The notes: generated by a model not told the origin, from the letters alone. A stretch of 64,000 nt of DNA from Octopus sinensis (GCF_006345805.1 NC_043003.1:10416001-10480000), one strand, 5' to 3'; shown: positions 22,448 through 49,998, counted from the stretch's first letter. Made by a program: numbers and translations.

Positions 22448-22492
22448 GGTAAGCAAAGCTACTCTTCAGTCAGTGAGGTAAGCAAGCTACTT

Positions 22493-24639
22493 TATTTCAT
22501 AAAATTTATCATATAGACAGTACAAAGATTGTGTAGCTTTGCGGGCTGGACAAACATATTAATGAATGAAAATGAAATATAATGAATGAGAGGCGAAACC
22601 CAACACCCGCCGATTGGATTTTTCTCGAAAATATTTTTTTTTTTTAATCAATATGAGGTTTCAAACCTCTTACAAGAAGGAAGCACTAAAACCTCTTGCA
22701 AGCCACCTTATTTCATTCAACCTGCCACAAGAGCTGCACATAGATTTACAACAATTCTCCTTATCAGATCCCTCAAGCAATGTGACTTGCCGCCTGCAGA
22801 CAACTCTGCAGCGACAAGTCGGGGCCTGCAAAGAGGAAAGCGAATTCTTTCTTGTCAAAGGTCGCTGTGACCTTTGACAAAAGGTTCTCCGTTACTACCT
22901 CCGCAGCCATCTGCGGAGGCCATATCGGACTACTTGGGCAGAACGAGTATACACGTTCTCGGTCACCCAAGCCGTCCAAAAATTTATTCACCGTCCTTTC
23001 CTTGTGGTAAAGGAGGAGAAACCCCTCCTCTTCACACTGCTCCGTCAGTGACACTTCCCACTGACAGAGCCCTATCCGCAGGTGGCACACATCCCACCTG
23101 CGGCTCCATCGGCGGCCTAGGAGCATCTGCCGACCGCCTTCTGATCCTCTTTTTCCTCTTTCTTTTTGAGGCTGCGGGAGCAGGGGGCTGCGTCGACAGA
23201 CGCGGGTGGTCGCTACCTTCCTCCGCCGCCTGTACATTCTTTGGTGAGCAACCATTGTTGCTCACCTTTTTCTTTTCGTGGAGGCAACTTCTTCCACGAC
23301 TTCCGCCATCTCCCCCTCCAATGAGGGGGCGGCGGGCACCTTCTCTTTCTCATGCTCCAGGGCCCCACCACGGCCTTCTGGAAGTTCCTTTTGATATGGC
23401 CAGGCTCCAGGCACAGATGACACTTGGGGGGTCGTCCCTCAAGTATCACCGGGTACCTGTGCACGGCCATTTTTAGGAAGTCTGGGAATTTCATCTCTCC
23501 CACGGCCACCGAGGTCCACAGGATCAAAGTTGCCTTTGACCCCTCCCAGGCGACCGCGGGAGTCATTTTTACACTCAGTAGCCTAGGCCCGCTATTCCCC
23601 AGGCCTCGCTGGATGGTCTCTCGATCCATTCCGCCTCCGTGCCCGGGGGCATCCCGCAAACCCAGGCTCTTTTTATTTTCCTGCCACAATACGAGGGGAG
23701 GAACAAAATTTCCTCTCCCTCAAGGGGCTCGCTAGCAAATCTGCTAGCTTCCTCGAGGGTACCAAACAGCAACCACACCGTTGCAAATTTAGTCCCCCGA
23801 GAAATAAACTTTATAGTTGGCAGGTGGTCTGCCAACTCTTTTTCTATTGTGCTCCTGTCGAAGAGGGCGATGGCCCCATGCGACCTAGAATAGGTTCGTA
23901 GGACCACCGTCCTCTTCTCAAGATCTTCAATCCACTCCAAAGCAGTGGCTTCATTTTTTTTTGCCATGTGACAGAAAGTTCAGAGTTCAAATAAAGTTCG
24001 ATAGTTTTGAAAAAAGTAATGAAGGTACAGAAAGGAGGAGCACAACAGAAGGGAAGAAATCAACAGAAAATCACAAACAAAAAAACAAAAAGAGAAGTTA
24101 AATAAAGTTCAAAATAAAGTCAATAAACAGCAAAACACGGCAAAAATCTTCTGGCCTTACGGTACTCCGGCCTGAGTTAAACCTGGAACGCCGCAACACA
24201 ACCTCTACAAAAATTGGTCCAAAAGGTAAATCCAAAAGTGGCTTATTCTTTTCTTGCGAGATACTCCGACAAAGGAATCAATTTTTCGGTCGAAAAGGTC
24301 TGGCCGTCCAATGGTAAAATAAATTCAATAAAACCAACCACAGCACTGGCCACCGCAACAGTAACTTTATTGGGTTCTGAGGATACGCCCCTCCACTGTT
24401 TTTTTTTTTTTCAATAAACACAAAAACAGCAGCCGACGAGAGCAGGTGAAATTGTCCCGGAGCTGGACACAACTTACTGAAAAAATAATTAGCACGCAAT
24501 AAATTATGCCCAACTCACAACAAACAAAATCACTCACCTCGACAACTGTTTTTGGTCTTTTTTTCTGTAATTGGACGGAGCTAGCTATCTCACGTCCACT
24601 TTGGTTCAACAGGAAGCAACTGACTAACAGCGCATGTGC
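22493..24639 (-). mobile_element. U10: class-B ORF1-only element (MAKKNEAT type), ORF 22773-23967 frameshifted
   Basis: VVLRTYS..ISRGTKFATVWLLF, LEGRPPKCHLCLEPGHIK, WPPQMAAEV; conserved tail and 5' UTR. Confidence 0.85.
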
Positions 24640-24654
24640 GTTAGCGAGCTACTT

Positions 24655-26652
24655 TTATTCATTAAATTTGCCATAAAGGCAGTACATAGATGTAGCTTTT
24701 GCGGGCTGGACGTAGACATTGATGGTATGAATGATGATGGAACGAAGATATTGATGGGAGAAGACGAAAGCACCCGCCGACTTCCGCTTCTCTAAGACAA
24801 TGTTCTTTTTTCCAAAAAATTTTACAGTCACAAAATTTTACAAAGGTCAAGAGACAATGAACCTCTTTCTCAATATGATACAAAAACATTAAACAGGTTC
24901 CAGTTACCTGGCCGACCAGCGCTCTTGCTTCATTGAGGCAATCATTCTTTGTCAGGCCGTACCATAAATTGAAAGGAGTCCTCCGGGAAGGAATTAGCGA
25001 TCCTGCATAGTTCGTTATCCAATATGACCTCCGCAGCCAGCTGCGAAGGCCACTCAGGGTCCTCTGTGCAGGACCGAAGTCTTTCCCATTGGCCTCTCTT
25101 TCTCATTTTACCTATTTCATTTTCCAGCGTTCCTCCTTTGTAGAAGACCACATATTGTTTCTCCGGCGGCACACCCGCCTGAGGAGACTTGGGAGACGCC
25201 GTCTGCGTGTTACAATCCGCCGGCGGCGTCCCGTTTCTCTTTTTCCTTTTTTCTTTTTCCTTGGGCCGCGGGAGGGTGAGGTTCCTGTGTTGCACACAAC
25301 GGGTCCTCTTTTTCTCCGGCTGTTCCCGAGTCTTTCGGTGGGTCACCATTGTTGCCCACCTTTCTTTTTCTCGTTGAGGATATAGTAACTTCCTCGTTCT
25401 GTTTCTCTCCCTCCATTGAGGGAGCAGGGAGAGGTTCCGATATCAGCTTCTCCAGGATCCTGCTTTGGTTCCTGGGGCAGTTCTTCTTAATGTGGCCGGT
25501 CTCCAGGCACAGATGACACTTGGGGAGCGTCCCTCAAGCATCACTGGATACTTGGACCCGGCCATCCTCAAGAAATCCGGAAAAACCAGACTTTTGGCTG
25601 ATTGGGTCCATAGGGTCAAAACAGCTTTCGACCCCTCCCAATCAGCCGCAGGCAACACTTTTACATTTAGCAGCTTGGCACTGCTATCACACAGACCCGG
25701 GCGGATAGAGTCCTCTATCCACTCGGGCTCAACGCCGGGTGGTAAGCCGCAGATCCAAGCCCTCAATAGTTTGTCTCCCATATAATTGGGGAGAAACAAT
25801 ATTTCTTTGCCCTCAACGGGCTGGCTTGCAAAGTCTCAAGCTTCTTTTGGGGAGTCAAATAGCAACCAAACCGTTGCGTATTTCACTCGCCGTGAGATAA
25901 ATTTAACAGCTGACATGTATTCCGCCAGCTCGTTCAGTATGGTGGCCTTCGGGAAGACGGCTATGGTGTCGAGCGACTTCGAGTATGTTCTCAACACCAC
26001 GGTCTTCCTTTCCAGTTCTTTTAAATATTTTTTGGGAGGTGTTAGGTCCCACACAATAAATTCCTTTGCCATTTCAAAACGGAATCCAATAAAAGTTCAA
26101 AGATGTAATAAAATAAATACGATAGAAAGAGGGAGAAGAGAAAACATAACCGAAGAGAAGAATTACAATAAAATAACAGTTCAAAAGAGTTCTTTTTAAA
26201 ATAAATGATAGCTGGAAAAAGAGAGTTCAAATTCAGCAAAGAAATTTTTTTTTTTTTTTTTTTTGGCCGAAAAGGTACTCCTGGCCAAACGTCCAAAACA
26301 GTCCTTGGTTATCCTTGGTGCCTCTTGGTAAATCCAACAAAACAGTCCTTGGTTATCCTTGGTAAATCCAACACAAAGGCGATTAATTTTTAGGAGGGGC
26401 TACGCCTCCTCAAAAAACACAATTATCACTGCAAAGTGAGTCTTTACGCTCGACCACAGGCAGGAAAAATGACCGGAGCAAAGTGGAGTCTACTACTCTC
26501 CAAAAAATAATAAATACAGAGCAATAAACTTCACTAAGCCCCCCAAAAAATTCAACAAATGCCTACCTGTAGTCGAGTCTCAAAATTCAATAATTCACGT
26601 CGAAAAACGCGACATCCGGCAGCAGCCAAAAAACACGTCCGTACACGTCGAA
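24655..26652 (-). mobile_element. U11: class-B ORF1-only element (MAKEFIVW type), ORF ~24905-26072 broken
   Basis: Same domain series; DPEWPSQLAAEV. Confidence 0.85.
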
Positions 26653-26668
26653 GGTTAGCAAGCTACTT

Positions 26669-28062
26669 TATTTTATCAGATTTGCCATAAAGGCAGTACA
26701 CAGATGGGACACTACAACACATGTGGGGACATATAACAATTAAAAAATAAAATATGATATAATGAATGAACATGAAAATGCACATGAAGAACAAATTAAT
26801 ATATGATAATATGAATATCTGAAAATGATATTATGAAGAGTCTGCTACTCACCCCACACTGAGTAACACAACTCGCTGTCTCTGGGTCCTGAGTTCTTTT
26901 TCTCTTTTCGTTCAATCCTGTTGCTTGATGGTAACCTTCTCTCCGTCATGCATTCATAACCATTTTTTTTTTGCCTGGAGGGGGGGTCTTCTAAATTTTG
27001 TGGTGTCTGTTCTTTTTTTCTTGAGGGGAAATGGGGGGGTCTGAGTGGTCTTGGGTGGGATGGGGTTGGACTGGGGTGCCAATTCATACTCAGTGTCTTT
27101 TCTTTTTTCTCTTTCTTCTTGTGCGCTCTGAAACTTTCCATTCCTCCTTTTCATCGCTTCCTTCGCCTATTTTTTCTTTTTCCTCTTTTTTCTCTTCTGT
27201 CTCTGCAACCACATCCGCGGCCGTAGTCTTTCGTAGGGGGCAGTATGCTCTAATGTGGCCCTTTTGGCCACATTTAAAGCAACGTGGTACTCTGCCCTCT
27301 ACCCACACCCTCAGCACGATTTCCCCCAGCGTCACAGTTTCTGCCAAGTTCTCAAGCTGTTCCTCCTCTGTCTGAATGATTAATTCGAGCGTCCTTCCTT
27401 TGCACCCTCCTTCTTCTGTTTCTGTGGCTTGGAGGACAGCCACCTTCTCCTCGCTTCCAACAAGGACAGCTGCCGCTATCCAAGCCCCTTCTACGTCCGG
27501 CGGAATTGCTTCTACCCTCACTTTAGAAGTTTTTCTTCCAAGGTATTTGGGTAGAAGCACTACCTCCTCCGTTTTCACCACCACACTTGCCAGCCTCATT
27601 GCCTCTTCAGCTGTCCTAAATTGGACAATCATTGTTCCGTATCTTTTTCCTTTTGTGATGTATGTGATTTCTTTTGACCTCTCTCTTAGCGCTCTTTCTG
27701 TATCCGCTTCCACCTGTTCAGCCCTTTTTCCTTATAGGTGATAGTCTTTCTTTCTATCTTCTCCATAATTCTTTTGGGGGGCGACAGTCTTACGTCCCCT
27801 CCCACCTTCTGTAGCATCTTGCCATGGTTTTTCTCGCCAGCCAAGTCCAGCTCCTTTCGTATCTTCTCCGTGACCTCTGCAAAACTCCTGGTCTTTTCAA
27901 GCATACCGGCCATTGCTATGACCGCCCTCACGAGCTCCTCCTCTGAAGACAACTCAGACCCGGTAAGGTCTGAGTACATTGTCTCACCGCAGCAACAACA
28001 CCGACGTCCGACTCGCACACAAACGACAAACCAAATGCACTATGGGTAACCGGAAGCAAGCT
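26669..28062 (-). mobile_element. U12: class-A ORF1-only element, ORF ~26845-27990 frameshifted
   Basis: MYSDLTGSELSSEEEL, EGRVPRCFKCGQKGHIRAYC; tail ttgccataaaggcagtacacagatgggac. Confidence 0.85.
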
Positions 28063-28078
28063 GGTTAGCGAGCTACTT

Positions 28079-30152
28079 TATTTCATTAGAATTTGCCACG
28101 AGGTCAGTACATAGAGTAGCTGCGGGCTGGACAAAAACATTGAGATGAGGATGATAATGATGAACAAAAATGGGAGGGGCACTGGCACCCGCCGACCAAT
28201 AACCCCTCGAATACAAAGTTTCTTTACAAAAATTTTTTACAAAATATTTTACACCAAAAATTTTACAACAAAATTTTTACAGCAAAAATTTTCTTACAAT
28301 TTTCCTTGTCAGGTCCCCCGAACTAATTGACCTTCCCCCTGCAGAAAACTCTGCATCGACAGGTCGGGGCCTGAAAACAGAAAAGCGAATTCTTTGTTGT
28401 CAAAGGTCGCTGCGACCTTTGACAAAGTTTTTTCCGTAACCGCCTCCGCAGCCACCTGCGGAGGCCAATTCGGACAGCTTCTGTCGAACGAGTACATTCG
28501 TCCTAGTTCGCCCAAGCCGTCCAGAAATTAATTAACCTTCCCTCCCTCGCAATAAAGGAGGACAATCGTTCCTTCTTCAGCGGAAGGTACTTCATGCTGC
28601 TCCATCAGTGGCACACATCCCACTGACAGAGCCCTCTCCGCAGGTGGCACACATCCCACCTGCGGCTCCGTCTGCGACCCATGGACATCAGCCGCCCGAC
28701 CTCTATTTCTCTTTCTCCTCCTTTTTTGGGGGGAGACTGCTGGCTCAGGGGGCTCCGTCAGCAGACATGGGGGGTCGCTATCCCCCTCCACCACCTGAAC
28801 ATTCTTTGGTGGGCAACCATTGTTGCTCACCTGTCTTTTTCTTTTCGTGGAGGCAACTTCCTCCAATACTTCCACCGTCTCCCCCTCCAATGAGGGGGCA
28901 GCGGGCACCTTTTCCCTTTCATGCTCCGGGGCACCGCCACGGCCCCCGGGACAGTTCCTCTTGATATGTCCAGGCTCCAGGCAACGGTGACACTTGGGGG
29001 GGGCGTCCCTCGAGTATCACCGGGTACCTGTGCCCGGCCATTCTCAGGAAGTCTGGGAATCTCATCTCTCCCACGGCCACCGGGGTCCACAGGATCAAAG
29101 TTGCCTTTGACCCTTCCAAGGCGACCGCGGGAGTCATTTTTACAATCAGTAGCCTGGGCCCGCTGTCCCCCAGGCCTCGCCGGATGGTCTCCTCGATCCA
29201 TCCCGCCTCATTGCCCGGGGGAAGCCCGCAAACCCAGGCTCTTTTTATTTTCCTGCCACAATACGAGGGGAGGAACAAAATTTCCTCTCCCTCGAGGGGC
29301 TCGCTAGCAAATCTGCTAGCTTCCTCGAGGGTACCAAACAGCAACCACACCGTTGCAAATTTAGTCCCCCGAGAATTAAACTTTATAGTTGGCAGATGTT
29401 CTGCCAATTCTTTTTCTATTGTGCTCCTGTCGAAAAGGGCGATAGCCCAACGCGACCTAGAATAGGTTCGTAGGACCACCGTCCTCTTCTCAAGATCTTT
29501 AATCCACTGCTTGGGTGGGACAACCTCCCACTCCAAAGCAGTGGCTTCATTTTTTTTTGCCATGTGACAGAAAGTTCAAATAAAGTTCGATAGTTTTGAA
29601 AAAAGTAAGGAAGGTACAGAAAGGAGCACAACAGAAGGGAAGAAATCAACAGAAAATCACAAACAAAAAAAAACAAAAAGTTAAATAAAGTTCAAAATAA
29701 AGTCAATAAACAGCAAAACACGGCAAAAATCTTCTGGCCTTACGGTTCTCCCGGCCTAAGTTGAACTCAGGAACACCGCGACTGGAACAGCTTTCACCAA
29801 ATTGGTATAATTGGTATCGAACCGCAGCACAATTAGTCCCTTCTACCTTGGTACTCTTTGGTAAATCCAGTGGGAGAACACAAAGACAATTTTTGCAGAG
29901 AGGCTACGCCTCCTCAAAAAACACAATTCTCACTGCAAAGTGAGTCTTTATGCTCGTCCACAGGCAGGAAAAATGTCCGAGCAAAGTGGAGTCTATTACT
30001 CTCCAAAAAATAAGTACAGAGCAATAAACTTCACTAAGCCCCCAAAAAAATTCAACAAATGCCTACCTGTAGTCGAGTCTCAAAATTCAATAATTCACAT
30101 CGAAAAACGCGACATCCGGCAGCAGCCAAAAAACACGTCCGAACACGTCGAA
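28079..30152 (-). mobile_element. U13: class-B ORF1-only element (MAKKNEAT type), ORF 28309-29563 frameshifted
   Basis: Near copy of U10; WPPQVAAEA. Confidence 0.85.
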
Positions 30153-30168
30153 GGTTAGCGAGCTACTT

Positions 30169-31475
30169 TTATTCATCGAATTTGCCATAAAGACAGTTCA
30201 CAGATGTAGCTTTTGCGGGCTGGACGTAGACATTAATGGTATGAATGATGGGGATGGAATGAAAATGGTGATGGGAGAAGACGAAAGCGCCCGCCGACTT
30301 CCGCTTCTCTAAGACAATGTTTTTTTTTTTCAAAAATTTCAAAAAAATTTCAAAATTTTACAAATGTCACATGAGGCAATGAACCTCTTTCTCAATATGA
30401 TACAAAAACATTCAACAGGTTCAAGTTACCTGGCCGGCCAGCGCTCTTGCTTCTTTGAAGCACTCACTCGCTTCCAGGCCGGACCACACAAGCACAAATG
30501 TACAGATCACTTTCCCATAGGACCTCCGCAGCCGTCTGCTAAGGCCACTTAGGGTCCTCCGAGCAGGACCGAAGTCCCTCCCATTGGCCTCTCCCTTTCA
30601 CCTTCCCTATCTCGCTCTCAATGGTCCCTCCCTTGTGGAAGAGGACCACATAAGTGACCTCCGGCGGCACATCCGCCTGAGGAGGCTCGGGAGACGCCGT
30701 CCGCGTCTCACAATCCGCCGGCGGCGTTCCGCTTTTCTTCCTTTTCTTTTTTCCTTGGGCCGCGGGAGGCTGAGGTTCCAGTGTTGCACACAACGGGTCC
30801 TCTTTCTCTCTCGCAGCTTCCGGGTCTTTTGGTGGGTCACCATTGTTGCGCACATTTCCTTTTCTCGTTGAGGAAGTTACTGTTTCCTCGTTCTGTTTCT
30901 CTCCCCCCATTGGGGGACCAGGGAGAGGTTCCAACATTAACTGCTCCAGGATCCTACTTTGGTCCCTGGGGTAGTTCTCCAGGCACAGGTGACACTTGGT
31001 GGGGGGGCGTCCCTCAAGCATCACCGGATACTTGGACCCGGCCATCCTCAAGAAGTCCGGAAAAACCAGACTTTTGGCTGATTGGGTCCACAGGGTCAAT
31101 ACAGCTTTCGACCCCTCCCAATCAGCCGCAGGCAGTACTTTTACATTCAGCAGCTTGGAACTGCTACCATCCAGACCCCGGCGGATAGAATCCTCTATCC
31201 ACTCGGGCTCAACGCCGGGTGGTAAGCCGCAGATCCAGGCTCTCAATTTTTCTCCCTTGTAATTTGGGAGAAACAATATTTCTTTGCCCTCAATGAGCTG
31301 GCTTGGAAAATCGCAAGCTTCTTTTGGGGAGTCAAATAGCAACCAAACCGTTGCGTATTTCACTCCCCGTGCGATAAATTTAACGGCTGGCATGTAGTCC
31401 GCCAGCTCGTTCAGTATGGTGGCCTTCGGGAAGACGGCTAGGGTGTCGAGCGACTTCGAGTAAGTCCTCAACACC
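30169..31475 (-). mobile_element. U14: class-B ORF1-only element, 5' end cut by the U15 tail
   Basis: ORF 30539-31474 with GRPPTKCHLC; junction aacacc|tttttctttattaccc. Confidence 0.85.
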
Positions 31476-32985
31476 TTTTTCTTTATTACCCACGAGGGGC
31501 GACATAGAGGGGAAACTACAAGACATTGGGGACATAGAACATTATAAAAATAAAAGTATGCAAGATGAAATTTTGAAAATGATAATATGAAAGTGATGCT
31601 AACGGCCCCATTCCGCTAGCATCACTTACCTGTCCTTCGTAACCTATCATCATCTGTCATCTCCAATCAGAAGCCCTACATTCTCTATCATTCTCTTAGC
31701 TCTCTCTTCAAACTCCTTCACCGTCTCATCCGTAAATTTTACCTTAGTCACTTTCACACCTTCATTTAAACAATTCACCATAATTCCATCCGTCCGTTCC
31801 TCTGGCACTACTGCATAACTACCATCTACCTTCTCATACCATGAATAATCACTTATCATGTCTATTGAGTCTTTTGTGTCCTCTTTTTTTCACAAAACAA
31901 AGAATATGGGGCCTGGGATCTTGGTTAATTTCTTGTGTGTCTGTATTTTTTTGTTTTCTTGTAGGCGGGGAGTGGGTGGAATCACTGTTTGCAGGGAAAG
32001 GATGGGACTCAGAGGGTGCGGGTGGGTTGGGGTTCAGTACAGTTCATTTTTCTCCTCCTTCTTTTCTTCCTTGCTTCTTCCCATTCAATCTGGGCTTCCT
32101 CCTCCTCATTTTCTTCCTCTACTTGTTTCTGTTTTACTTCCTCCTCTTCCTGGTTCTTCACCACAGTTTCCTTTTGTGGGGGAGGGCAGTAAGCTCTTAG
32201 GTGGCCCCTCAGGCCACACTTGTAGCAACGTGGAGCTCTGCCCTCCACCCACACTCTCATAATAACATCGCCCATCTTATTTTCGGTTAGTCTTTCCAAC
32301 GTATCTACCTTCGCTTGAACATTCATATCCAGTATTGCTCCCTTCCATCCTTCATCCTTTACGGTGGCATGCAAGATGTCCACCTCTTCTTCACAATCTT
32401 TTATCACAGCTGCTGCTATCCATTCTGCTTCAATGTGGTGGGGTATTCCCTCCACCCGGATTCTCGTTGTCCTTCTATTTAAATACGTTGGTAGCATGAA
32501 AATTTTCTCCGTCTTTACAGCTTTCGCCGCCATTCTTCTCGCTACTCGTTCACTTTTGTATTGCACTACTACCGTGCCAAACTCGTTTCCTCTTGCAACA
32601 AATATATCTTCACCTGTCCTTTTTACCGCCTCCTCGATTACTTCCATTTTGATAATTTCGACATTTTTGCTATTGATTTCGTAGGTTCGGTACTTTATAG
32701 TCCTTTTGTTGAACCACTCGCCACGCTTTGGTGGTGGTGTCAATTCTACATCGCTTCCAACTTTCTCCATATACTCTTGAAAGTCTGGTAATTTGACTAA
32801 ATCTATGTCTTTCTCTTCCGTTTTCCTCGCTGCGCCCGCGTATGTCTTTCCAACTTTGACGTCCATTTTATTCACGGCGTTTATCAATTCCTCTTCGGCG
32901 GTTGATAGCTCCCATAGACTTTCGAACAAAGTACTTTCTGCCATCTCTCCCGTTAGGGAGGGGCGGTTCATTACTTCTTGTCTGT
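31476..32985 (-). mobile_element. U15: class-A ORF1-only element (ORF 32009-32945 plus C-terminal module 31650-31860)
   Basis: EGRAPRCYKCGLRGHLRAYC; tail cccacgaggggcgacatagagggg; paralog of U24. Confidence 0.85.
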
Positions 32986-34492: not shown

Positions 34493-34507
34493 GTTAGGGA
34501 GCTACTT

Positions 34508-36257: not shown

Positions 36258-36273
36258 GGTTAGCGAGCTACTT

Positions 36274-37971: not shown

Positions 37972-37987
37972 GGTTAGCGAGCTACTT

Positions 37988-40024
37988 TATTTCAAAAAAT
38001 TTTGCCACTAGGGCAGCACACAGAGTAGCTACGGGCTGGACAAGGACATTAATGAATGATGGTGATGGAGGAAGATGGTGATGGGAGAAGACAAAAGCGC
38101 CCGCCGACTTTCGCTTCTCTAAAACATTGTTCAAAATTAACATTTAGTACAATTTACAAATTTTAGAGGAGGCAATGAACCTCCTCTTTAATATGTTACA
38201 GAAAATGTTCAAAAAGCCTATGTAACCCGGCCGACCATCGCTCTTGCCTCATCGAGGCAATAATCGCTGGTCAGGTCGGGGTCCATAGGTATAATCTTGT
38301 ACGAGTCCACCGAGAAGGAACCCACGATCCTGCCTAGATTACCCCTTTCTACGACCTCCGCAGTCAACTGCGAAGGCCACTTGGGGTCCTCCGTACAAGA
38401 CCGGAGTCCCTCCCAATGTCCTCTTTTTCTCATGTGTACGGTGTTCTCCACCGTTTCTCCTTTAAAAAAGAGGAGCACACAGTCTTCTACAAATTGTCCC
38501 TCAGGCGGCACACCCGCCTGAGAGGACCCGGGATACTCGGGAAACGCCGTCTGCGTGTTACACTCCGCCGGCGGCGTTCCGTTTCTCCTTTCTTTTTTTT
38601 TGCCTTGGGCCACGGGAGGTTGAGGTTCCGGAGCTGCACGCACCGGGTTCTCCTCTCCCGCAGCTTTTAGGTACTTTGGTGGGTCGCCATTGCTCCCCAC
38701 CTTTCTCTTTCTTTTGGAGGAGGTTTTTTCCCCCTCCTCATTTTGTTTCTCTCCCTCCATTGAGGAGGCAGGGAGAGGCTCCGATATCAGCCGCTCCAGG
38801 ATCCTACTCTGGTCCCTGGGGCAGTTCTTTTTGATGTGGCCAGTCTCCAAACACAGGTGACACTTGGGGGGCGTCCCTCAAGCATCACCGGATACTTGGA
38901 CCCGGCCATTCTCAAAAAGTCCGGCAAAACCAGACTCTTGGCTGACTGGGTCCATAGGGTCAAAGTAGCCTTTGACCCCTCCCAATCAGCCGCAGGTTGT
39001 ATCCTAACATTTAGGATGTTTGCGTTACTACCACCGAGACCCCGGCGGATAGTCTTCTATCCACTCGGGTTCAATGCCGGGTGGCAGGCCACAGACCCAT
39101 AGTCTTGTTAATTTTTCTCCCTTGTAACTCGGGAGAAACAAGATCTCTTTGCCCTCAATGGGCTTGCTTGCGAAATCGCAAGCAGCTTTTGGGGAGTCAA
39201 ACAGCAACCAAACTGTTGCGTATTTGGCTCCCCGTGTAATGTATTTCACGGCTGGCATATAATCTGCCAGCTCGTCAATTATTTTTGCCTTCGGAAAGAC
39301 CGTGATGGTGTTGAGCGACTTTGAATAAGTCCTCAGTACCACGGTCTTGTCCTCCAGCTGTTTTACATACTTTTTGGGAGTTTCCAGCTCCCACACAATA
39401 AGTTCTTTGCCATTTTTAAAACCAAATGCAAAAACAGTTCAAATAGGAGCAAACAAAAGTGACAGAAAGTAGGAAGAGAAAACAAAACGGAAACGAAGAA
39501 TTACGGTAAAATTACAGTTCAGAGTTCAAATAAAGGATAGCTAGAAGAAAGAGAGTTCAAATATGGCAAAGAATTATTTTTTTTTGGCCGAAAAGGTAGT
39601 CCAGGCCAAGCGTCAACGGCAATCCTTGGTTATTCTGGTACTTGCAAAAACAGTCCACGAATGTCCCTGGTGCCTCCTGGTAATCCAAAAGTGATTCAAT
39701 AGGTAATCCAAAAATGAATCAAAATATTTTTGAGGAGGGGCTACGCCTCCTCAAAAAACACAATACTCACTAAAAAGTGAGTCTTTAAATTCGACAACAG
39801 ACAGAAAGATTACATCTGGAGCAAAGTGGAGTTTATTACCCGCAAAAAAAATATTAATGCTAAATAACATTAACTGTTAAATAACATTAAAAGCAAGCAA
39901 TTATACCTCACTAAGCCCCTAAAAATATAAAACGTCCTACCTGTCGTCGTCAAAAAGTTCAATATTTCACGTGGCAACACGTGACATTCGAAGCAGCAAT
40001 GAAAACACGTCCGACCAAGTCGAT
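37988..40024 (-). mobile_element. U19: class-B ORF1-only element, ORF 38218-39412 frameshifted
   Basis: WELETPKKY, ETGHIKKNC, DPKWPSQLTAEV. Confidence 0.85.
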
Positions 40025-40040
40025 GGTTAGCGAGCTACTT

Positions 40041-41515
40041 TATTTCAATTATTTTGCCATAAAGGCATTACACAGAGGGGACACTACAAAAACATGTGGA
40101 AACATATAACAATTAAGAATATGTAAAAATAAAATGATACTGTGAGTGACATGAAAACGAACGTGATAAAATAAATTAAGTTTATGATAACATGCTTGAT
40201 ATCTGAAAATGAAAATATGAAGAGTGTGCTACTCACCCCACTCTTAGCAACACCACTCGCTGCCTTTGAGTCTGAATTCTTCTCTAATCTCTGGTCTAGT
40301 CCTTCTTTTTCCACTCTCACTATCGCTTAATAACATTCTTTCGCAACCTTTTTCACCGGGGGAGGGGTTTTCTAAATTCTGTGGTGTCTGCTCTTTTTTC
40401 TTTTTCTTTTTTTCTTGTGGGGAAAGGGAGTGGGTGGGTCTGGTGTCTGTATGGGGCGGGTGGGTCTGAGTGGTCTTGGGTGGGATGGAGTTGGACTGGG
40501 GTACCATTTCACACCGTGTTCTTTCTTTTCCTCTTCTTACTTCTACTCTCTGCTACTATCCATTCTTCCTCCTTTCGTCCGTCTTTCTTTTCATCCTCTT
40601 TTTTCTCCTTCGTCTCCGCAACTGGTTCATCTATTTTTTCCTCTATCTTTTTCTTCTGTAGGGGGCAGTGTGCTCTAATGTGGCCTTTTTGGCCACATTT
40701 AAAGCACCGCGTGGTTCTGCCTTCTACCCATACTCTCAATACTATTTCTCCCATCGTCACCGTTTCCGCCAAATTTTCCAGCTCCTTCGCCTCCACTTGT
40801 ATGATCATTTCCAGTAATTTTCCTTTGTAGCTTCCTTCCTCTGTCTCTGTGACTTGGAGGACAGTCACCTCCTCAATTCCAACGAGGACGGCTGCCGAAA
40901 CCCAAGCCACTTTTATGTCAGGTGGAATTCCTTCTACCCTCACCTTAGAATTCTTTCTTCCAAGATAGGAGGGTAGAAGTACTAGTTCCTCAGTTTTTAC
41001 GGTTGTACTTGCCAGCTTCTTCGCCTCCTCTTCTGTTTTAAACTGGACAACAACCGTCCCATATCCGCTTCCTTTTGCTATATATGTTACTTCCTTCGAA
41101 AGCCCCTTGAGAGCTTTTTTTACTTTTTCCATCTTCATCTGCTCCACCTTCCTACTCTCCACTGAGTGCACCTTGTAGGTAATTTTCTTTTCCATATTTG
41201 CCATAACCGTTTTCGGGGGTAATAACTTTACGTCACTTCCCACCTTCTGTGTCATCTTATACAGCTCCTTCAGTTCTGTTAGGTCTACTTCCTTTTTCTT
41301 TACCTCTGCCGCATCAGCAAAACTTTTTGTTCTTTCCAAATGTTCGTCCATTCTGTTTACCGCCTTAACGAGCTCCTCCTCTGATGTGGATAGTTCGTAC
41401 TCGCTAAGGTCTGAATACATTCTTTTCCACTCGCCAACAAACCGCTGGCGAGCAGCTCAAAGGATTCTGTCCGCCTAGTCAAAACTCAACACAGCAAATA
41501 ACTCGACGCATGCGC
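40041..41515 (-). mobile_element. U20: class-A ORF1-only element (U12 relative)
   Basis: ORF 40509-41420 plus tail ttgccataaaggcattacacagaggggac. Confidence 0.85.
40509..41420 (-). CDS. Class-A ORF1, 303 aa
   Basis: ATG start, MYSDLSEYELSTSEEEL, RRM-like region, CFKCGQKGHIRAHC. Confidence 0.75.
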   Translation of the reverse strand: MYSDLSEYELSTSEEELVKAVNRMDEHLERTKSFADAAEVKKKEVDLTELKELYKMTQKVGSDVKLLPPKTVMANMEKKITYKVHSVESRKVEQMKMEKVKKALKGLSKEVTYIAKGSGYGTVVVQFKTEEEAKKLASTTVKTEELVLLPSYLGRKNSKVRVEGIPPDIKVAWVSAAVLVGIEEVTVLQVTETEEGSYKGKLLEMIIQVEAKELENLAETVTMGEIVLRVWVEGRTTRCFKCGQKGHIRAHCPLQKKKIEEKIDEPVAETKEKKEDEKKDGRKEEEWIVAESRSKKRKRKNTV

Positions 41516-41530
41516 GTTAGCGAGCTACTT

Positions 41531-43607: not shown

Positions 43608-43622
43608 GGTAAGAAGCTACTT

Positions 43623-45880
43623 TATTTCAACAATTTTGCCACTAGGGCAGTACACAGAGTAGCTACGGGCTGGACAAAGACATTAATGGATGATGGTGGT
43701 TGTGGATGAAGATGGTGATGGGAGAAGTCAAAAAGCGCCCGCCGACTTCCGCTTCTCTAAGACATTGTTCTTTTTTTTTTCAATAAGTTCAATTTTCTTT
43801 TTTTCCTTAGTTTCAATAAATCGACATGAGGTTGCAAACCTTTTACACGAAGGAGGCACTAAAACCTCTTACAAAGTTATTTTTTTCATTTCTCTTGCCA
43901 CAAGGGCAGTGTATGAATTCACAAAAATTCTCCCTGTCAGGTCCCCGAAGCAAATTGTCTTGCCGCCTGCAGACAACTCTGCGACGACAAGTCGAGGCCT
44001 GCAAAGAGAAAAGTAAAATGTTTCCTCTCAAAGGTTTTTGTGACCCTTGACAAAATGTTTTCCGTTACTACCTCCGCAGCTACCCGCGGAGGCCATAACG
44101 GACTCCTTGAGCTGACCGTGTCCTTGCGTTGTCGGTCACCCAAGCCATCCAAAAACTTTTCCACCTTCCCTCCCTTGTGGTAAAGGAGGAGAAACGACTC
44201 CTCTTCACAGGAAGGGACCTCACACTGATCCGTCAGTAGCACACTTTCCACTGACGGAGTCCTGTCCGCGGGTGGCACACATCCCACCCGCGGCTCCGTC
44301 GGCGACACAGAAACGTCAGACGTCCGACCTCTCCTTTTTCTCCTTCTTTTGGGGGAGACTGCTGACCCAGGGGACTCCGTCACCAGACACGGGGGAATGC
44401 TATCCCCCTTCGCCCCCTGAGCGTTCTTTGGTGGGCAACCGTTGTTGCTCGCCAGCCTCTTTCTTTTCGTGGAGGCAACCTCCTCCACGACTTCCACCGT
44501 CTCCCCCTCCAATGAGGGGACGGCGGGCACCTTTTCCTTTTCATGTTCCGGGGCGGCACCACGGCCCCCGGGACACTTCTTCTTAATATGTCCAGGCTCC
44601 GAGCACCGGTGACACTTGGGGGCGCGTCCCTCAAGCATCACCGGATACTTGGATCCGGCCATCTTCAAGAAGTCTGGCAAAACCAGACTCTTGGCCGACT
44701 GGGTCCACAGAGTCAAAGTAGCCTTTCCTCCTTCCCAGTTAGCCGCAGGCTGCATTTTCACATTCAGGATCTTGGCGCTACCACCGCTCAGACCCCGGCG
44801 GATGGAATCTTCCACCCACTCGGGCTCAAAGCCGGGCGGCAGGCCACAGACCCATAAACGTAACAATGTTTCCCCCTTGTAACTGGGGAGAAACAGAATC
44901 TCATCGCCCTCAATGGGCTGGCATGCAAATTTGCAAGCTGCTTCAGCGGAGTCAAATAGCAACCATACCGTTGCGTATTTGACTCCCCGTTGAATATGTT
45001 TAACGGCTGGCATATAATCTGCCAGCTCGTTCACAATGGTATCTCTCGGAAAAACCATTATGGTGTCGAGTGACTTTGAAAATGTTCTTTCCTCGAGTTC
45101 GTGTAAATATTTTTTGGGAGGTGTTAACTCCCACACAGTAAAATTCTTTGCCTTTGCCATAACGTAAAATACAATAGTTCAAAATGATAAACTAAAATTA
45201 GCCACAGAAAGGAGAATGAAAAATGCAACAGAAGGGAAGAAAATAAAAATGGCAGTTCAAAAAAGTTTTTACAAATAAATAATAGAGAGAGTTCAAATCA
45301 GGCAAAGGAATTCAGTTTTCTTTTTTTTTTTTTTTTTCACACTTCTTCGGCCAAAATATAATCCAGGCCAAATGCACTTGGTAAGACCCTTGGTAAATAA
45401 TCCTTGGTAATCCGTGGACACACAATGACAATTTCAAATAATTTTTTCAGACGGACTAAGCCGCTTCAAAAATACAATTTCTTTTCGCTCGACACAGGCA
45501 GAAAAACTATATCCGGAGCAAAGTGGCGCTCTATTACTTGCTAAAAAATATTAAATGCTAATAAAACTTCGCTTCGCTCGCAAAAATACAAAATTCCTAC
45601 CTTTAGTCGAGACGAAAGTTCAATATTTCACGTTGAAACAACGCGACATCAATACAATTTTCTTTCCACTCGACACAGGCAGAAAAATTATATCTGGAGC
45701 AGAGTGATGCCTTATTATCTGCTAAAAAACTATTTAATGCTAAAAAACATTAATGCAAGCAATAAAACTTCACTAAACTCCCAAAAATACAAAGTTCCTA
45801 CCTTTAGTCGAGACGAAAGTTCAACAATTCACGTTGAAACAACGCGACATTTGCCGGAGCAAAAAACAACACGTCTGTAT
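43623..45880 (-). mobile_element. U22: class-B ORF1-only element, mosaic, with duplicated 5' UTR monomer
   Basis: Open ORF 43937-45160; 3' half near-identical to U21, 5' half like U23. Confidence 0.85.
43937..45160 (-). CDS. Class-B ORF1, open 407-aa frame (RRM-like x2, CCHC, C-terminal module)
   Basis: ATG to stop without breaks; CHRCSEPGHIKKKC. Confidence 0.8.
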   Translation of the reverse strand: MAKAKNFTVWELTPPKKYLHELEERTFSKSLDTIMVFPRDTIVNELADYMPAVKHIQRGVKYATVWLLFDSAEAACKFACQPIEGDEILFLPSYKGETLLRLWVCGLPPGFEPEWVEDSIRRGLSGGSAKILNVKMQPAANWEGGKATLTLWTQSAKSLVLPDFLKMAGSKYPVMLEGRAPKCHRCSEPGHIKKKCPGGRGAAPEHEKEKVPAVPSLEGETVEVVEEVASTKRKRLASNNGCPPKNAQGAKGDSIPPCLVTESPGSAVSPKRRRKRRGRTSDVSVSPTEPRVGCVPPADRTPSVESVLLTDQCEVPSCEEESFLLLYHKGGKVEKFLDGLGDRQRKDTVSSRSPLWPPRVAAEVVTENILSRVTKTFERKHFTFLFAGLDLSSQSCLQAARQFASGT

Positions 45881-45895
45881 GGTAAGAAGCTACTT

Positions 45896-47376
45896 TATTT
45901 TATTTTATTTGCCACTTAGGGCATCACACAGAGGTAGCGGTAGCTTCGGGCTGGACAGGGACATTAATGGATTATGGTAATGATTGATGAAAATGGTGAT
46001 GGGAGAAGTCAGAAGCGCCCGTCGACCTCTGCCTCTCTAATACAATGTTCGTTTTACAATGTTTTTAAATTTTACAAAATTCAAAATTCAAAAATTTCAG
46101 AAAATAACAGTGTTCAATGAATACATTTAGTAAAATGTTCAAAAATGTTCAAAAATGTTCAAAAAGTGTTTAACAATTCTCCCCGTCAGGTCCCCGAAGC
46201 AAATTGTCTTGCTGCCTGCAGACAACTCTGCGACGACAAGTCGGGGCCTGCGAAGAGAAAGGTAAAGTGCCTTCTTTCAAAGGTCTCTGCGACCCTTGAT
46301 AAGATAGCCTCCGTTACCCTTTCCGCAGCTACCCACGGAAAAACCAGACTCTTGGCCGACTGGGTCCACAGAGTCAAAGTGGCCTTTGACCCTTCCCAGT
46401 TAGCCGCAGGCTGTATTTTAACGTTGAGGATCTTGGCGTCCCTGTCACCCAGCCCCCGGCGGATAGTCTTCTATCCACTCGGGTTCAAAGCCGGGCGGCA
46501 GGCCACATACCCACAAACGTAACAGTTTTTCCCCCCTGTAACTGGGGAGAAACAGAATTTCATTGCCCTCAATGGGCTGGCTTGCACATTTGCAAGCTTC
46601 TTCGGCGGAGTCAAATAGCAACCAGACCGTTGCGTACTTGACCCCGCGTTGTATATGTTTAACGGCTGGCATATAATCTGCCAGCTCGTTCTCAATGGTA
46701 TCTCTCGGAAAGACCATTATGGTGTCGAGTACCTTTGAAAATGTTCTCAGCACCACTGTTCTTTCCTCAAGATCATGTAAATATTTTTTGGGAGGTGCCA
46801 ACTCCCACACAGTAAAATTCCTTGCCTTCGCCATAACGTAAAATACAATAGTTCAATAATAACTAAATTTAGCCACAGAAAGGAGAATAAAAATGTAACA
46901 GAAGGGAAGAAAAAATAAAAATGGCAGTTCAAAAAAGTTTTTAACAAATAAATGATAGAAGAGAAAGAGAGTTCAAATTAGGCAAAGGAATTCAGTTTTC
47001 TTTTTTTTCTCACTTCTTCGGCCAGAATGTAATCCGTGCCAAATGCATTGGTAAGACCCTTGGTAAACAATCCTTGGTAATCCCGTGGACACACAATGAC
47101 GATTTCACAATAATCTCTTCAGTCGGACCAAGCCGCTTCAAAAATACAATTTCTTTCGCTCGACACCGGCAGAAAAATTACATTCGGAGAAAAGTGGAGC
47201 CTTATTACTTTCTAAAAAATATTAAATGTTAAAAAACATTCATGCAAGCAATAAAGCTTCACTAAACTCACAAAAACACAAAATTCCTACCTTTAGTCGA
47301 GACGAAAGTTCAATATTTCGCGTTGAAACAACACGACATCTGGAGCAGCAAAAAAAACACGTCTAACTCAGACGAA
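45896..47376 (-). mobile_element. U23: class-B ORF1-only element with a large internal deletion near 46335
   Basis: TQSAKSLVF joined directly to PWVAAERV; knuckle and linker missing. Confidence 0.8.
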
Positions 47377-47413
47377 GGTAAGAAGCTACTTAGCACACAG
47401 CCACTCCTGCGCC

Positions 47414-47414
<1 letters not shown>
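47377..47414 (-). mobile_element. 5' head of a tRNA-derived SINE (family B), interrupted by the array
   Basis: Minus strand AGGCGCAGGAGTGGCTGTGTGCTAAGTAGCTTCTTACC after (TA)n; matches my recollection of an abundant Octopus SINE head GGCGCAGGAGTGGCTGTGTGGTAAGTAGCTTGCTTACC (not verified by search). Confidence 0.65.
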
Positions 47415-48960: not shown

Positions 48961-48974
48961 CAGACTGGAATTAA

Positions 48975-49998
48975 TTTTTTATTACCCACAAGGGGCGAAC
49001 ATAGAGGGGACAAAACAATCTGATGTGGGGTCAGATTTACGAATGAAATTACGCAAAATGATGAGCTTTAAAAATTTACATAAATTAAAAAGAAATCGAA
49101 TGGTAGAACAGACCGGAAGACATTACGGATGGAGTGGGGGCGGGTTTAGCTCGGACCCCACGAGCCCCGCCTCCCCACTGATACTTTGGTTTTCGTCTTG
49201 TTATACATTTATGTGGTATCTTTCACTCGCAACTTTCGTGCTACATCCTTCCATCGATCTTCATAGACTTTCTTAGTCAGGCATTTTCTCTCCAGCCCTA
49301 TTTTCCTTTTCAGGTGGAAGATGAAGTAATTCATCAGTCCAGGGCCGGAGATGAGATTGTCTGACTAAACTTTTCAGCCAAGTCTTCCAAATCACCTCTT
49401 TCGCAATTGCAACTACAACGAGAAAACAATTCTTACCTTCTTTCGCGAGGAAATCCGGTGGGTCAATTTTTATAATAGACTCAGTCGACAGCTGTACCCT
49501 TCGTGTGCTTGACAACAGCTGTTCGGCATAAACCCACACCTCAGACACGACCGAACATTGAACAATAGCATGCGGGACGGTTTCCCTATCCCGCTCGCAT
49601 CTTGGACATGTCGGACTGTCTTGGCCACCATGCCTTGCGAGTTTGTCCCAAACAGGTAAAGCTCCTCTGTAACACTGCCATGCCAGAGATCTCTGAAAGT
49701 TGTCCAGGGTCTTCGGCCCGAATGTACGTTGGAACAGACTAGCCAGCTGATTATCGTCGAGACCCAGGGTTTCCCCTAAGGTATCTTCACATTCCGCCTC
49801 TACCAACCCTCTATAGAAGAATGTGGTGGAACCCCCACCGCAGGCGTTGCCCGAGCGACGGAATAGCAGGAGAGCCTTGCGACACTCCATGTACCATGTT
49901 CCCAGTTTCGATCTTCGATTCAGCCAGGTTTCCCATCCACCGAAACTAGTGAACTTGGGAAACATCAGTTTTGCCAGCGGAGACCACACCCGTTCACC
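48975..49998 (-). mobile_element. U25: Tx1 LINE 3' fragment (C-terminal zinc finger + tail), near copy of the U28 3' end
   Basis: WQCYRGALPVWDKL..CPRC..HAIVQC; tail matches 59918-60160. Confidence 0.9.

What the first reader, a model, noticed from the sequence alone, without database searches (positions are those of the whole stretch)
22448..47414. ~25 kb head-to-tail array of ORF1-only (gag-only) Tx1-like elements
Seen: 14 consecutive co-oriented units (U10-U23) of 1.3-2.3 kb. Most have 5' UTR + ORF1 (two RRM-like domains, CCHC knuckle, C-terminal module) + conserved 3' tail ending in AATAAA, and none has ORF2. Two distinct ORF1 classes are interleaved without periodicity. Known: Drosophila HeT-A is a gag-only partner of RT-encoding TART/TAHRE in head-to-tail arrays, and Tx1-clade LINEs are often target-specific. 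Inference: a non-autonomous, protein-coding Tx1 family that piles up at one site and borrows RT/EN in trans. I know of no description of this in cephalopods.
Basis: partly seen in the sequence, partly recalled or inferred. Interest (0 to 1): 0.92.

Follow-up and report, generated by a model that had tools for sequence, protein, structure and literature searches.

The report
SINE-targeted gag-only LINE array
A 25-kb stretch of an octopus chromosome is a one-way pile-up of 14 retrotransposons that encode only a gag-like protein and no reverse transcriptase. All of them landed at the same 14-base site inside a single copy of a very abundant SINE, which is a new twist on a known kind of site-specific jumping gene, not a new kind of system.

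Summary
Window 22491-47413 (minus strand) holds 14 co-oriented ORF1-only LINE-like units with no trace of ORF2. The array starts at the 5' half of one tRNA-like SINE copy (47390-47413). Twelve of the thirteen unit-to-unit joins are a tail ending AATAAA (two carry one extra A) abutting a 13-14-nt motif, GTAGCT[C/T]GCT[A/T]ACC.

That motif is the insertion site. Eight of eight single copies on other chromosomes sit at exactly this position in the SINE. The genome has at least 387 exact tail-plus-site junctions (0 in the control) and at least 59,378 empty sites.

The units are not local duplicates. They interleave with copies from other chromosomes in a tree, and ORF1 evolves under purifying selection (median dN/dS 0.36). 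The array therefore most likely grew by repeated site-specific insertion, helped by each element carrying a copy of the site at its own 5' end.

The RT/EN donor was not identified. A young autonomous family next door has a homologous 3' end but does not use this site. Tx1-clade membership was not tested phylogenetically. The SINE's 3' half is missing at the array's downstream end.

Verdict: a new variant of a known kind, of moderate interest.

The parts
47390..47413 (-). 5' half of one SINE copy (the box-A side of its tRNA-like head), the upstream boundary of the array. It is preceded by a (TA)n run at 47414-47471.
   Evidence: The 24-nt SINE start matches once in the window with 1 mismatch and 0 expected. 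BLAST of the SINE head matches 47416-47377. Sequence read.
45894..47389 (-). Unit 1, class A. Starts with the motif variant GTAGCTTCTTACC. ORF1 has internal deletions (longest ORF 129 aa).
43621..45893 (-). Unit 2, class A, 2273 bp, with an intact 407-aa ORF1 (43937-45160). ORF1 is 94% identical in protein to a copy on contig C2.
41529..43620 (-). Unit 3, class A, with ORF1 split into 154-aa and 252-aa pieces.
40039..41528 (-). Unit 4, class B, 1490 bp, with an intact 303-aa ORF1 (40509-41420). It has a CCHC knuckle and no C-terminal module.
37986..40038 (-). Unit 5, class A, degraded (longest ORF 180 aa).
36272..37985 (-). Unit 6, class A, degraded and shortened. It is sister to unit 5 in the tree.
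34506..36271 (-). Unit 7, class A, degraded.
30167..34505 (-). Composite block holding units 8-10. It consists of a class F 5' part (about 32990-34505, no tail), then class B2 (31482 to about 32990, intact 320-aa ORF1 at 32009-32971), then a 5'-truncated class A (30167-31481). B2 carries the tail type of the autonomous family (...CCCCTCGTGGGTAATAAA). The two internal joins lack the site motif.
28077..30166 (-). Unit 11, class A, with a frameshifted ORF1 (214-aa N-terminal piece).
26667..28076 (-). Unit 12, class B, degraded (180-aa ORF).
24653..26666 (-). Unit 13, class A, degraded.
22491..24652 (-). Unit 14, class A ORF1 with a B-like start to its 5' UTR, degraded.
22461..22490 (-). Two copies of the site motif separated by 14 nt, at the untidy downstream end of the clean array.
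17478..22460 (-). Chimeric continuation: fragments of F, B-like, A-like and C-like ORF1 joined without the site motif. It ends in the autonomous family's tail type at 17478, followed by a 5'-truncated copy of a second SINE. The expected 3' half of the target SINE is absent.
47608..64000 (-). Adjacent upstream array of the ORF2-bearing family, which I call T2 (ORF1 + EN/RT/zf-RVT ORF2). It also contains one ORF1-only B2 unit (47608-48977). It is not inserted at the SINE site and continues beyond the window into L019.

Best explanation
The region is a head-to-tail array of ORF1-only (gag-only) non-LTR retrotransposons. They belong to several related lineages (classes A, B and F) that integrate at one precise position in the tRNA-like head of an abundant octopus SINE: between ...GTGGTAA and GTAGCTTGCTAACC.

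SHOWN. The elements are a dispersed family and always sit at this position. The array begins at the SINE's 5' half, and its units come from different subfamilies.

INFERRED, HOW INSERTION WORKS. [quoted passage not shown] INFERRED, WHY ARRAYS FORM. Each element carries a 13-14-nt copy of the site at its own 5' end. So every insertion leaves a usable site on both sides, and later insertions land at any junction in the same orientation. The element-borne version (GTAGCTCGCTAACC) differs at one base from the SINE's version. It is probably the better substrate, which would explain why occupied sites are re-used although about 60,000 empty sites exist.

INFERRED, THE ENZYME SOURCE. The elements make no RT or EN, so those must come in trans. 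The best candidate is a relative of the young autonomous family in the same window (T2), whose last ~40 nt of 3' tail are homologous. T2 itself does not use this site. Either an unseen site-specific relative supplies the enzyme, or the ORF1-only RNA or protein supplies the targeting.
For: - Site specificity, 5' side. 8 of 8 singleton copies on seven other contigs and at a distant site on C7 have the SINE's 5' half immediately upstream of the motif.
- Site specificity, 3' side. In the 12 fetched loci where the 3' end of a singleton or array is recognisable, the last tail is followed by the motif and the SINE's 3' remainder.
- Site specificity, all tails. All 26 A/B-type tails in 264 kb of fetched DNA are followed by the motif, allowing one extra A, a duplicated tail end or one mismatch.
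- Genome-wide counts. The exact tail-plus-site pattern occurs 387 times against 0 in the control.
- Empty sites. An uninterrupted SINE copy shows the site is contiguous. There are at least 59,378 exact empty sites.
- Array boundary. The window has exactly one SINE 5' half, at 47390-47413, directly followed by the motif and a class A 5' UTR.
- Independent insertions. The 407-aa ORF1 is 94%, 87% and 81% identical to copies on C2, C11/C8 and C1, but only 73% to its neighbour. In a DNA tree, window units interleave with copies from other contigs, with only one sister pair inside the array. Unit decay ranges from intact to heavily broken.
- Stable ORF1-only lineage. 12 intact ORF1s from different subfamilies give dN/dS of 0.20-0.55 (median 0.36) over 64 pairs, with dS up to 1.7.
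- The motif is carried by the element. The variant GTAGCTTCTTACCA[G/T]ACAGACG recurs at the 5' end of one subfamily at independent loci (window 45893 and 43620; L008, L014, L015), while the downstream SINE copy keeps GTAGCTTGCT. The C variant is at 8 of 13 junctions here but in only 244 of 59,378 empty SINE sites, or 0.4%.
- Tail homology. The tails of classes A and B, T2 and a T2-tailed SINE share a homologous 3' core.
- Precedent. Tx1-mobilised SINEU-3 inserts at one site of a DNA transposon, and its tandem copies sandwiching a TSD are attributed to sequential insertion (PMC4494074).
Against: - The SINE's 3' half is not found downstream of the array. It is absent from the window and from 20 kb further on that strand. 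The downstream end is a chimeric block ending in a different tail type.
- Two joins inside block 30167-34505 lack the motif and join truncated elements. Simple sequential insertion does not explain them.
- No ORF2-bearing element with this tail or at this site was found. T2 tail plus site is essentially absent: 6 hits at up to 2 mismatches against 1 in the control.
- Only 122 of 292 exact tails (control 15) are followed by exactly GTAGCT. In the fetched sample the misses are one-base variants.
- The high share of the C variant here could instead reflect seeding in a rare C-variant SINE followed by true target-site duplication.
- Preference for occupied sites is an inference from counts, not a measurement.
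Confidence: 0.77

Rival explanations
1. Concatemer model. Much of the array was made in one or a few integration events. The reverse transcriptase jumped from the 5' end of one template RNA to the 3' end of another, guided by the shared 14-nt motif that the RNAs carry at their 5' end and, as read-through, at their 3' end.
For: - Several joins fuse 5'- or 3'-truncated elements of different classes with no site motif. These are 31481/31482, about 32990, the 17478-22460 block, and the T2 unit cut at 55838.
- The motif behaves as part of the element, which would give microhomology for precise jumps.
- The tail ends in AATAAA, so polyadenylation should fall in the downstream motif (inference).
Against: - Units differ widely in decay, from two intact ORF1s at the SINE-site units to many-stop copies. 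They also differ in distance to their nearest relatives. This argues for different ages.
- Most copies in the genome list are singletons.
- No transcripts were examined.
Confidence: 0.12
2. Local amplification. The array arose by tandem duplication or unequal crossing-over of one or two founder units. It would then be a gene cluster or satellite-like array, not a set of repeated insertions.
For: - All units are co-oriented and adjacent.
- Units 5 and 6 are sister copies in the tree.
Against: - Neighbouring units are 72-88% identical and belong to different classes and subfamilies.
- Their closest relatives are on other contigs.
- There is no periodicity.
- The same architecture occurs as singletons flanked by SINE halves.
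Confidence: 0.03
3. Host-used locus. The roughly 85-kb block of co-oriented LINE-like elements is maintained for a host function. One option is a uni-strand piRNA cluster. Another is a HeT-A-like structural array. In either case the ORF1-only units would be trapped or selected there.
For: Every LINE-type unit from L017 through the window into L019 is on the same strand, including two T2 arrays and the ORF1-only array. The only opposite-strand element noticed is a young LTR element at 6512-10241.
Against: - Co-orientation inside the ORF1-only array is fully explained by the oriented target site.
- The locus is interstitial, not terminal.
- No small-RNA or expression data are available.
- Most units are decaying.
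Confidence: 0.05
4. Assembly artefact. The array is a mis-join or over-expansion of dispersed repeats.
For: Repeat-rich region. No read data were available to me.
Against: - Units differ by 12-28% and have unit-specific lesions, so they cannot be collapsed or expanded copies of one another.
- Junctions follow a consistent biological rule.
- Similar arrays occur at other loci.
- The window contains no N.
Confidence: 0.03

Closest known systems
Tx1L LINEs inserted at a fixed site in the Tx1D DNA transposon of Xenopus laevis, and other target-specific Tx1-group families such as Keno, Kibi, Koshi, Dewa and Mutsu. This is from my own knowledge. The target-specific nature of the Tx group is also stated in PMC3747384.
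   Same: - APE-type LINE relatives with an ORF1 that has a CCHC knuckle.
- Precise, oriented insertion into one sequence of another repeated element.
- No poly(A) tail.
   Different: - The target here is the tRNA-like head of a SINE.
- The inserted elements have no ORF2 at all.
- They carry a copy of the target at their 5' end.
- Clade membership was not tested by RT phylogeny, and the units have no RT to test.
SINEU-3 of crocodilians, mobilised by Tx1 and inserted in Mariner-N4_AMi (PMC4494074)
   Same: - A non-autonomous element with strong preference for one site in another transposon.
- Tandem copies that sandwich the duplicated site, interpreted as sequential insertions.
   Different: - SINEU-3 is a short non-coding SINE with an snRNA head.
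- The elements here are 1.4-2.3 kb and encode a selected ORF1 protein.
- Arrays here reach 14 units.
HeT-A with TART/TAHRE at Drosophila telomeres (for example PMC5537684)
   Same: - A gag-only element that must use another element's reverse transcriptase.
- Head-to-tail, one-orientation arrays mixed with RT-encoding relatives nearby.
   Different: - HeT-A belongs to the jockey clade and adds to chromosome ends without a sequence-specific nick.
- It ends in oligo(A) and serves the host.
- The array here is interstitial, sequence-targeted, AATAAA-ended and mostly decaying.
HAL1 ('half-L1') of mammals, from Bao and Jurka 2010 as cited in PMC4494074
   Same: A long-lived non-autonomous LINE derivative that keeps ORF1 and lacks ORF2.
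   Different: - HAL1 is a dispersed L1 derivative with a poly(A) tail.
- It has no site specificity and forms no arrays.
R1/R2 and other rDNA- or repeat-specific LINEs
   Same: - A precise target in a multicopy sequence.
- A proposed role of target-homologous RNA ends in defining the junctions (PMC4494074 discusses co-transcription and target specificity).
   Different: Those elements are autonomous, and their targets are host RNA genes, not another retroposon.

Membership tests
L1/Tx1-group LINE | ORF2 with an APE-type endonuclease, a reverse transcriptase and a C-terminal zinc-binding motif | tested here: not met
   The 14 units have no ORF2 (best tblastn E=0.74). The feature is present in the neighbouring T2 elements: Exo_endo_phos, RVT_1 and zf-RVT.
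L1/Tx1-group LINE | ORF1 of the RRM + CCHC type | tested here: inconclusive
   - The CCHC motif is present; zf-CCHC scores 17-21 bits against a 20.8 cut-off.
- RRM support is only a sub-threshold RRM_3 hit in class B (19.3 bits against 22.9).
- The N-terminal fold model is poor (pLDDT 42), and Foldseek gives nothing below E=0.1.
- ORF1 classes A, B and F are homologous to the ORF1 of ORF2-bearing units (23-40% identity, E 1e-13 to 1e-52).
L1/Tx1-group LINE | RT phylogeny placing the element in the Tx1 branch | not testable with these tools
   - The units have no RT.
- For T2, no named Tx1 reference sequences were available.
- The database hits of T2 ORF2 carry no informative names.
- RepeatMasker-style 'L1-Tx1' families are reported as active in Octopus vulgaris (PMC13282606).
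Target-specific non-LTR retrotransposon | Independent copies at the same nucleotide position of a defined target, in one orientation, with empty sites available for comparison | tested here: met
   Eight of 8 singletons are at the site. There are 387 exact junctions against 0 in the control, and at least 59,378 empty sites.
Non-autonomous ORF1-only LINE (HAL1-like) | ORF1 retained and selected, ORF2 absent, amplified as such | tested here: met
   - No ORF2 lies within 4-5 kb downstream in 16 loci.
- There are more than 100 scored copies and 12,160 first-look candidates.
- Median dN/dS is 0.36.
Non-autonomous ORF1-only LINE (HAL1-like) | 3' end shared with an identified autonomous partner | tested here: inconclusive
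   - The last ~40 nt are homologous to the T2 tail but not identical.
- A/B tails have an extra ...GAAATAAA extension.
- No ORF2-bearing element with the A/B tail was found.
HeT-A-like telomeric retrotransposon | Addition to chromosome ends, with arrays at termini | tested here: not met
   The window is C7:10,416,001-10,480,000 of a 117,540,060-bp contig. Other copies are scattered along all large contigs.
HeT-A-like telomeric retrotransposon | Gag-only coding capacity with RT supplied by a partner element | tested here: inconclusive
   Gag-only is met. The partner is not identified.
HeT-A-like telomeric retrotransposon | Promoter in the 3' end of the upstream unit driving the downstream unit | not tested
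   No transcript data. The only promoter tool available is for bacterial sigma-70 sites.

The most novel reading that the evidence does not exclude
Division of labour outside telomeres. The ORF1-only lineages provide their own targeting and borrow catalysis from a non-site-specific, highly active autonomous family (T2). Targeting could come from RNA ends that mimic the SINE site. It could also come from the class A ORF1 protein's extra C-terminal ferredoxin-like domain. If so, LINE integration specificity can be set by the template RNP and not by the ORF2 endonuclease.
Probability: 0.2. Interest if true: 0.8.

Novelty: new variant of a known kind. Interest (0 to 1): 0.55.

Why it matters
Site-specific LINEs, gag-only LINEs and tandem re-insertion are each known. 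Their combination is not described in the papers I could search. Here, several ORF1-only lineages have been kept under selection over deep divergence. They parasitise an unidentified RT source, home to the pol III head of a SINE, and carry a copy of their own target.

This gives a natural system for asking what sets integration specificity in APE-type LINEs: the endonuclease, the RNA ends or the ORF1 protein. It also lets one ask why ORF1 is kept by a non-autonomous element.

In practice it shows that some long co-oriented 'arrays' in cephalopod assemblies are single-SINE insertion hotspots. Repeat annotators will fragment or mislabel them.

Tried and rejected
- TANDEM DUPLICATION. Rejected by identities to other contigs and by the tree.
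- COMPOSITE SINE CARRYING THE ELEMENT. I considered a SINE-plus-insert unit that moves as a whole. It is rejected because the flanking SINE copies have different 5' truncations, different outer flanks and private substitutions.
- T2 AS A DIRECT PARTNER AT THE SAME SITE. The T2 tail plus site pattern is essentially absent. None of the listed T2 ORF2 hits on C1-C3 lies near a listed junction (compared by eye).
- SINE HEAD AS A tRNA. ARAGORN and Rfam do not call the 5'-truncated copy I tested. The tRNA origin rests on visible box A/B-like motifs and on my recollection of the octopus SINE literature.
- FOLD AND SEQUENCE SEARCHES FOR ORF1. Full-length class A gave pLDDT 42 and no Foldseek hit below E=0.1. 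A PDB profile search found only zinc-knuckle proteins at E of about 0.5. The C-terminal module modelled well (pLDDT 79.5, pTM 0.71). It has only non-significant ferredoxin-like neighbours such as PII-like, RRM and E2 DNA-binding domains, with E of 0.14 or more.
- PROTEIN DATABASES. ORF1 class A has a single hit, an uncharacterised Octopus sinensis protein. T2 ORF2 hits are unnamed.
- MORE GENOMIC COPIES. I did not try to read flanks by other means.
- 3' HALF OF THE SINE. Searched for with up to 3 mismatches and not found.

Full report
WHAT IS THERE.
The window is G000:C7:10,416,001-10,480,000 of a 2.72-Gb, 13,516-contig genome. The only database relative of the main protein is from Octopus sinensis, so this is an octopus. 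Every self-similarity of 300 bp or more is direct, and every LINE-type coding similarity is on the minus strand.

ORF2-type similarity occurs only at 76-5007 and 49212-63555. This is an APE endonuclease, a reverse transcriptase and zf-RVT (Pfam). ORF1-type similarity runs through almost the whole window. Inside 22448-47414 the best ORF2 match has E=0.74. The 'no ORF2' observation therefore holds.

UNIT STRUCTURE.
Aligning the joins showed a fixed rule. A conserved tail ends ...GGCAAA(6-9 nt)GAAATAAA (two tails read GAATAAA plus one extra A), with no poly(A). It is followed at once by GTAGCT[C/T]GCT[A/T]ACC and then by a 5' UTR. The motif occurs 10 times at up to 2 mismatches, all on the minus strand and all in 22-42 kb, against 0.93 expected. 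Three more junctions carry the variant GTAGCTTCTTACC.

This yields 12 motif-bounded blocks. Eleven are single units of 1410-2273 bp. One, at 30167-34505, is a composite of three elements whose internal joins lack the motif. That makes 14 units.

Only three ORF1s are intact: 407, 303 and 320 aa. By ORF1 the units fall into class A (ten units), class B (two), class F (one) and class B2 (one).
- Class A is about 400 aa, with a CCHC knuckle, a basic linker and a conserved C-terminal module of about 90 aa.
- Class B is about 300 aa and has no C-terminal module.
- Class B2 carries the tail type of the ORF2-bearing family.

All classes are homologous to the ORF1 of the ORF2-bearing units, at 23-40% identity.

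THE KEY FINDING: THE MOTIF IS A TARGET SITE IN A SINE.
A whole-genome search with the 407-aa ORF1 gave more than 100 scored matches on many contigs, many with open frames, out of 12,160 first-look candidates. I fetched 16 of these loci. None has an ORF2 downstream. Eight are singletons and eight are head-to-tail arrays of 2-4 units.

All eight singletons are flanked in the same way. Upstream lies ...GGCGCAGGAGTGGCTGTGTGGTAA. Downstream lies GTAGCTTGCTAACCAACCACATGGTTCCGGGTTCAGTCCC... These are the two parts of one abundant SINE with box A/B-like motifs. An uninterrupted copy in L019 shows they are contiguous in the empty state. The flanking SINE copies differ in their 5' truncation and outer flanks, so these are independent insertions into pre-existing SINE copies.

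Further counts:
- All 26 A/B-type tails in the fetched DNA are followed by the motif.
- In the 12 fetched loci where the 3' end of a singleton or array is recognisable, it runs into the SINE's 3' remainder.
- The exact tail-plus-site pattern occurs 387 times in the genome against 0 in the control.
- The empty site occurs at least 59,378 times.

In the window, the only SINE 5' half lies at 47390-47413. It is directly followed by the motif and a class A 5' UTR. The array sits inside one SINE copy.

NOT A LOCAL DUPLICATION.
The intact class A ORF1 is 94% identical to a copy on C2. It is 87% identical to copies on C11 and C8, and 81% to one on C1. It is only 73% identical to its neighbour in the array. 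In a maximum-likelihood tree of 40 class A copies, window units are scattered among copies from other contigs. Only units 5 and 6 are sisters. Units range from intact to badly decayed, which suggests different ages.

A STABLE, SELECTED ORF1-ONLY LINEAGE.
Twelve intact ORF1s from several subfamilies, all ORF1-only and all at the SINE site, give dN/dS of 0.20-0.55. The median is 0.36 over 64 pairs, and dS reaches 1.7. The ORF1-only design is therefore old, and the protein matters for propagation.

Class A is also mosaic. The 5' UTR and N-terminal half of the window's intact copy are about 90% identical in DNA to one subfamily. Its C-terminal module belongs to another. This points to recombination or template switching between lineages.

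THE ELEMENT CARRIES ITS OWN TARGET.
The 5' motif is not a simple target-site duplication, for three reasons.
- One subfamily has the same deviant version (GTAGCTTCTTACCA[G/T]ACAGACG) at independent loci, while the downstream SINE copy keeps the normal version.
- The version with C at position 7 is at 8 of 13 junctions here and at 2 of 3 in L003.
- In singletons L011 and L013 the C version is upstream while T is downstream. The C version makes up only 244 of 59,378 empty SINE sites, or 0.4%.

Each insertion therefore brings a site copy with it. The nick falls just 5' of the motif, so new copies land immediately upstream of an existing element, in the same orientation.

With about 60,000 empty sites, 14 hits in one SINE cannot be random re-use. 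Occupied sites must be strongly preferred, or several units must enter at once. Both readings are inferences. A rare C-variant founder SINE with true duplication is an alternative for this particular array.

WHO SUPPLIES RT AND EN?
The flanking ORF2-bearing family, T2, is young and abundant. Ninety listed ORF2 matches are 91-100% identical to the query, with open frames up to about 1,135 aa, out of 37,351 first-look candidates. T2 also forms arrays elsewhere.

Its tail (...GTCCCCTCTATGTT.GCCCCTTGTGGGTAATAAA) is homologous over about 40 nt to the class B and class A tails. It is shared by a very abundant SINE. But T2 tails are not found joined to the SINE site, and T2 flanks show no common target.

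Two ORF1-only B2 units with T2-type tails (31482-32990 and 47608-48977) show that ORF2 loss has happened repeatedly in these families.

I could not look further for a site-specific ORF2-bearing relative. The donor is therefore unknown.

LOOSE ENDS.
- The SINE's 3' half is missing downstream.
- After the last clean unit there are two motif copies 14 nt apart (22461-22490). A 5-kb chain of truncated F, B-like, A-like and C-like fragments follows. It ends in a T2-type tail at 17478 next to a second SINE.
- This chain, the composite block and a T2 unit cut at 55838 look like template-switch chimeras. Alternatively they reflect an insertion-associated deletion. This is an inference.

PROTEIN FOLD.
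The full class A model is poor (pLDDT 42), with no significant structural match. The C-terminal module models well (pLDDT 79.5, pTM 0.71) as a beta-alpha-beta-beta-alpha-beta-alpha domain. It has only non-significant ferredoxin-like neighbours. 'Two RRMs' remains unconfirmed. The CCHC knuckle is confirmed.

COMPARISON WITH KNOWN SYSTEMS.
Mechanistically the array works like target-specific Tx1-group elements. It is closest to Tx1-mobilised SINEU-3, whose tandem copies sandwiching the site are attributed to sequential insertion (PMC4494074). In coding capacity it resembles HAL1 and HeT-A. It is not telomeric and has no oligo(A).

'L1-Tx1' families are listed as active in Octopus vulgaris (PMC13282606). 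Searches of the held literature found no description of ORF1-only, SINE-targeted elements. Repbase and Dfam could not be consulted.

VERDICT.
This is a new variant of a known kind, with moderate interest (0.55).

Noticed in passing
window 6512-10241 (+): A short LTR retrotransposon on the opposite strand. Its 272-275-bp LTRs (6512-6783 and 9967-10241) are 98.9% identical. It has a gag-like ORF with a CCHC knuckle (6831-7586) and an ORF with weak RT and DUF7047 hits (7640-9001). It looks like a recent insertion into the LINE-rich block.
   Followed up: partly
window 47608-64000, L019:1-5200, and other contigs listed: The ORF2-bearing family T2 is very young and abundant. Ninety listed ORF2 matches are 91-100% identical to the query, with open frames up to about 1,135 aa. 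It also forms regular head-to-tail arrays elsewhere, for example five copies at C9:76.606-76.624 Mb. Its own insertion preference is unclear.
   Followed up: partly
L017, L018, L020, L001, L006, L012 and L015 (positions): A very abundant SINE ends in the same tail as T2 (...GTCCCCTCTATGTTTAGCCCCTTGTGGGTAATAAAGAAA), so T2 is probably its mobiliser. Several T2-type tails are directly followed by 5'-truncated copies of another tRNA-like SINE (...GGTATTTCGTCTGCCGTTACG...), at window 17478 and at L017/L018.
   Followed up: no
window 30167-34505, 17478-22460 and 55838: These joins fuse truncated elements of different classes without the site motif. In each, a 3'-truncated unit runs into the 5' end or the interior of another. 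They suggest template switching during reverse transcription or insertion-associated deletion.
   Followed up: partly
window 43621-45893 compared with L010-L012 and L014: Class A elements are mosaics. The 5' UTR plus the N-terminal half of ORF1 is about 90% identical in DNA to one subfamily. The C-terminal module and linker come from a lineage only about 30% identical in protein over that part. The 5' UTR also contains an internal direct duplication of about 200 bp.
   Followed up: partly
window 59360-59602 (-): A 45-bp tandem repeat with 5.3 copies, upstream of the 228-aa ORF1 of one T2 unit (in its 5' UTR or an N-terminal extension).
   Followed up: no
window 10915-11215: Tandem repeats of 66-69 bp lie inside overlapping ORFs on both strands, next to an ORF1-like remnant (11093-11737). 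The meaning is unclear.
   Followed up: no
window 15251-15916: A 650-bp degenerate (TG)n/(TA)n microsatellite interrupts the LINE-rich block.
   Followed up: no
L018 through the window to L019 (about C7:10.40-10.49 Mb): All LINE-type units across roughly 85 kb are on the same strand: two T2 arrays, the ORF1-only array and scattered remnants. The oriented SINE site explains only the middle 25 kb of this.
   Followed up: no
genome-wide: Tails of the ...GGCAAATTTAATGAAATAAA type are rarely followed by exactly GTAGCT (1 of 16 listed). In the window the related tails carry one extra A before the motif. So this is probably a junction variant and not a second target, but I did not check.
   Followed up: no
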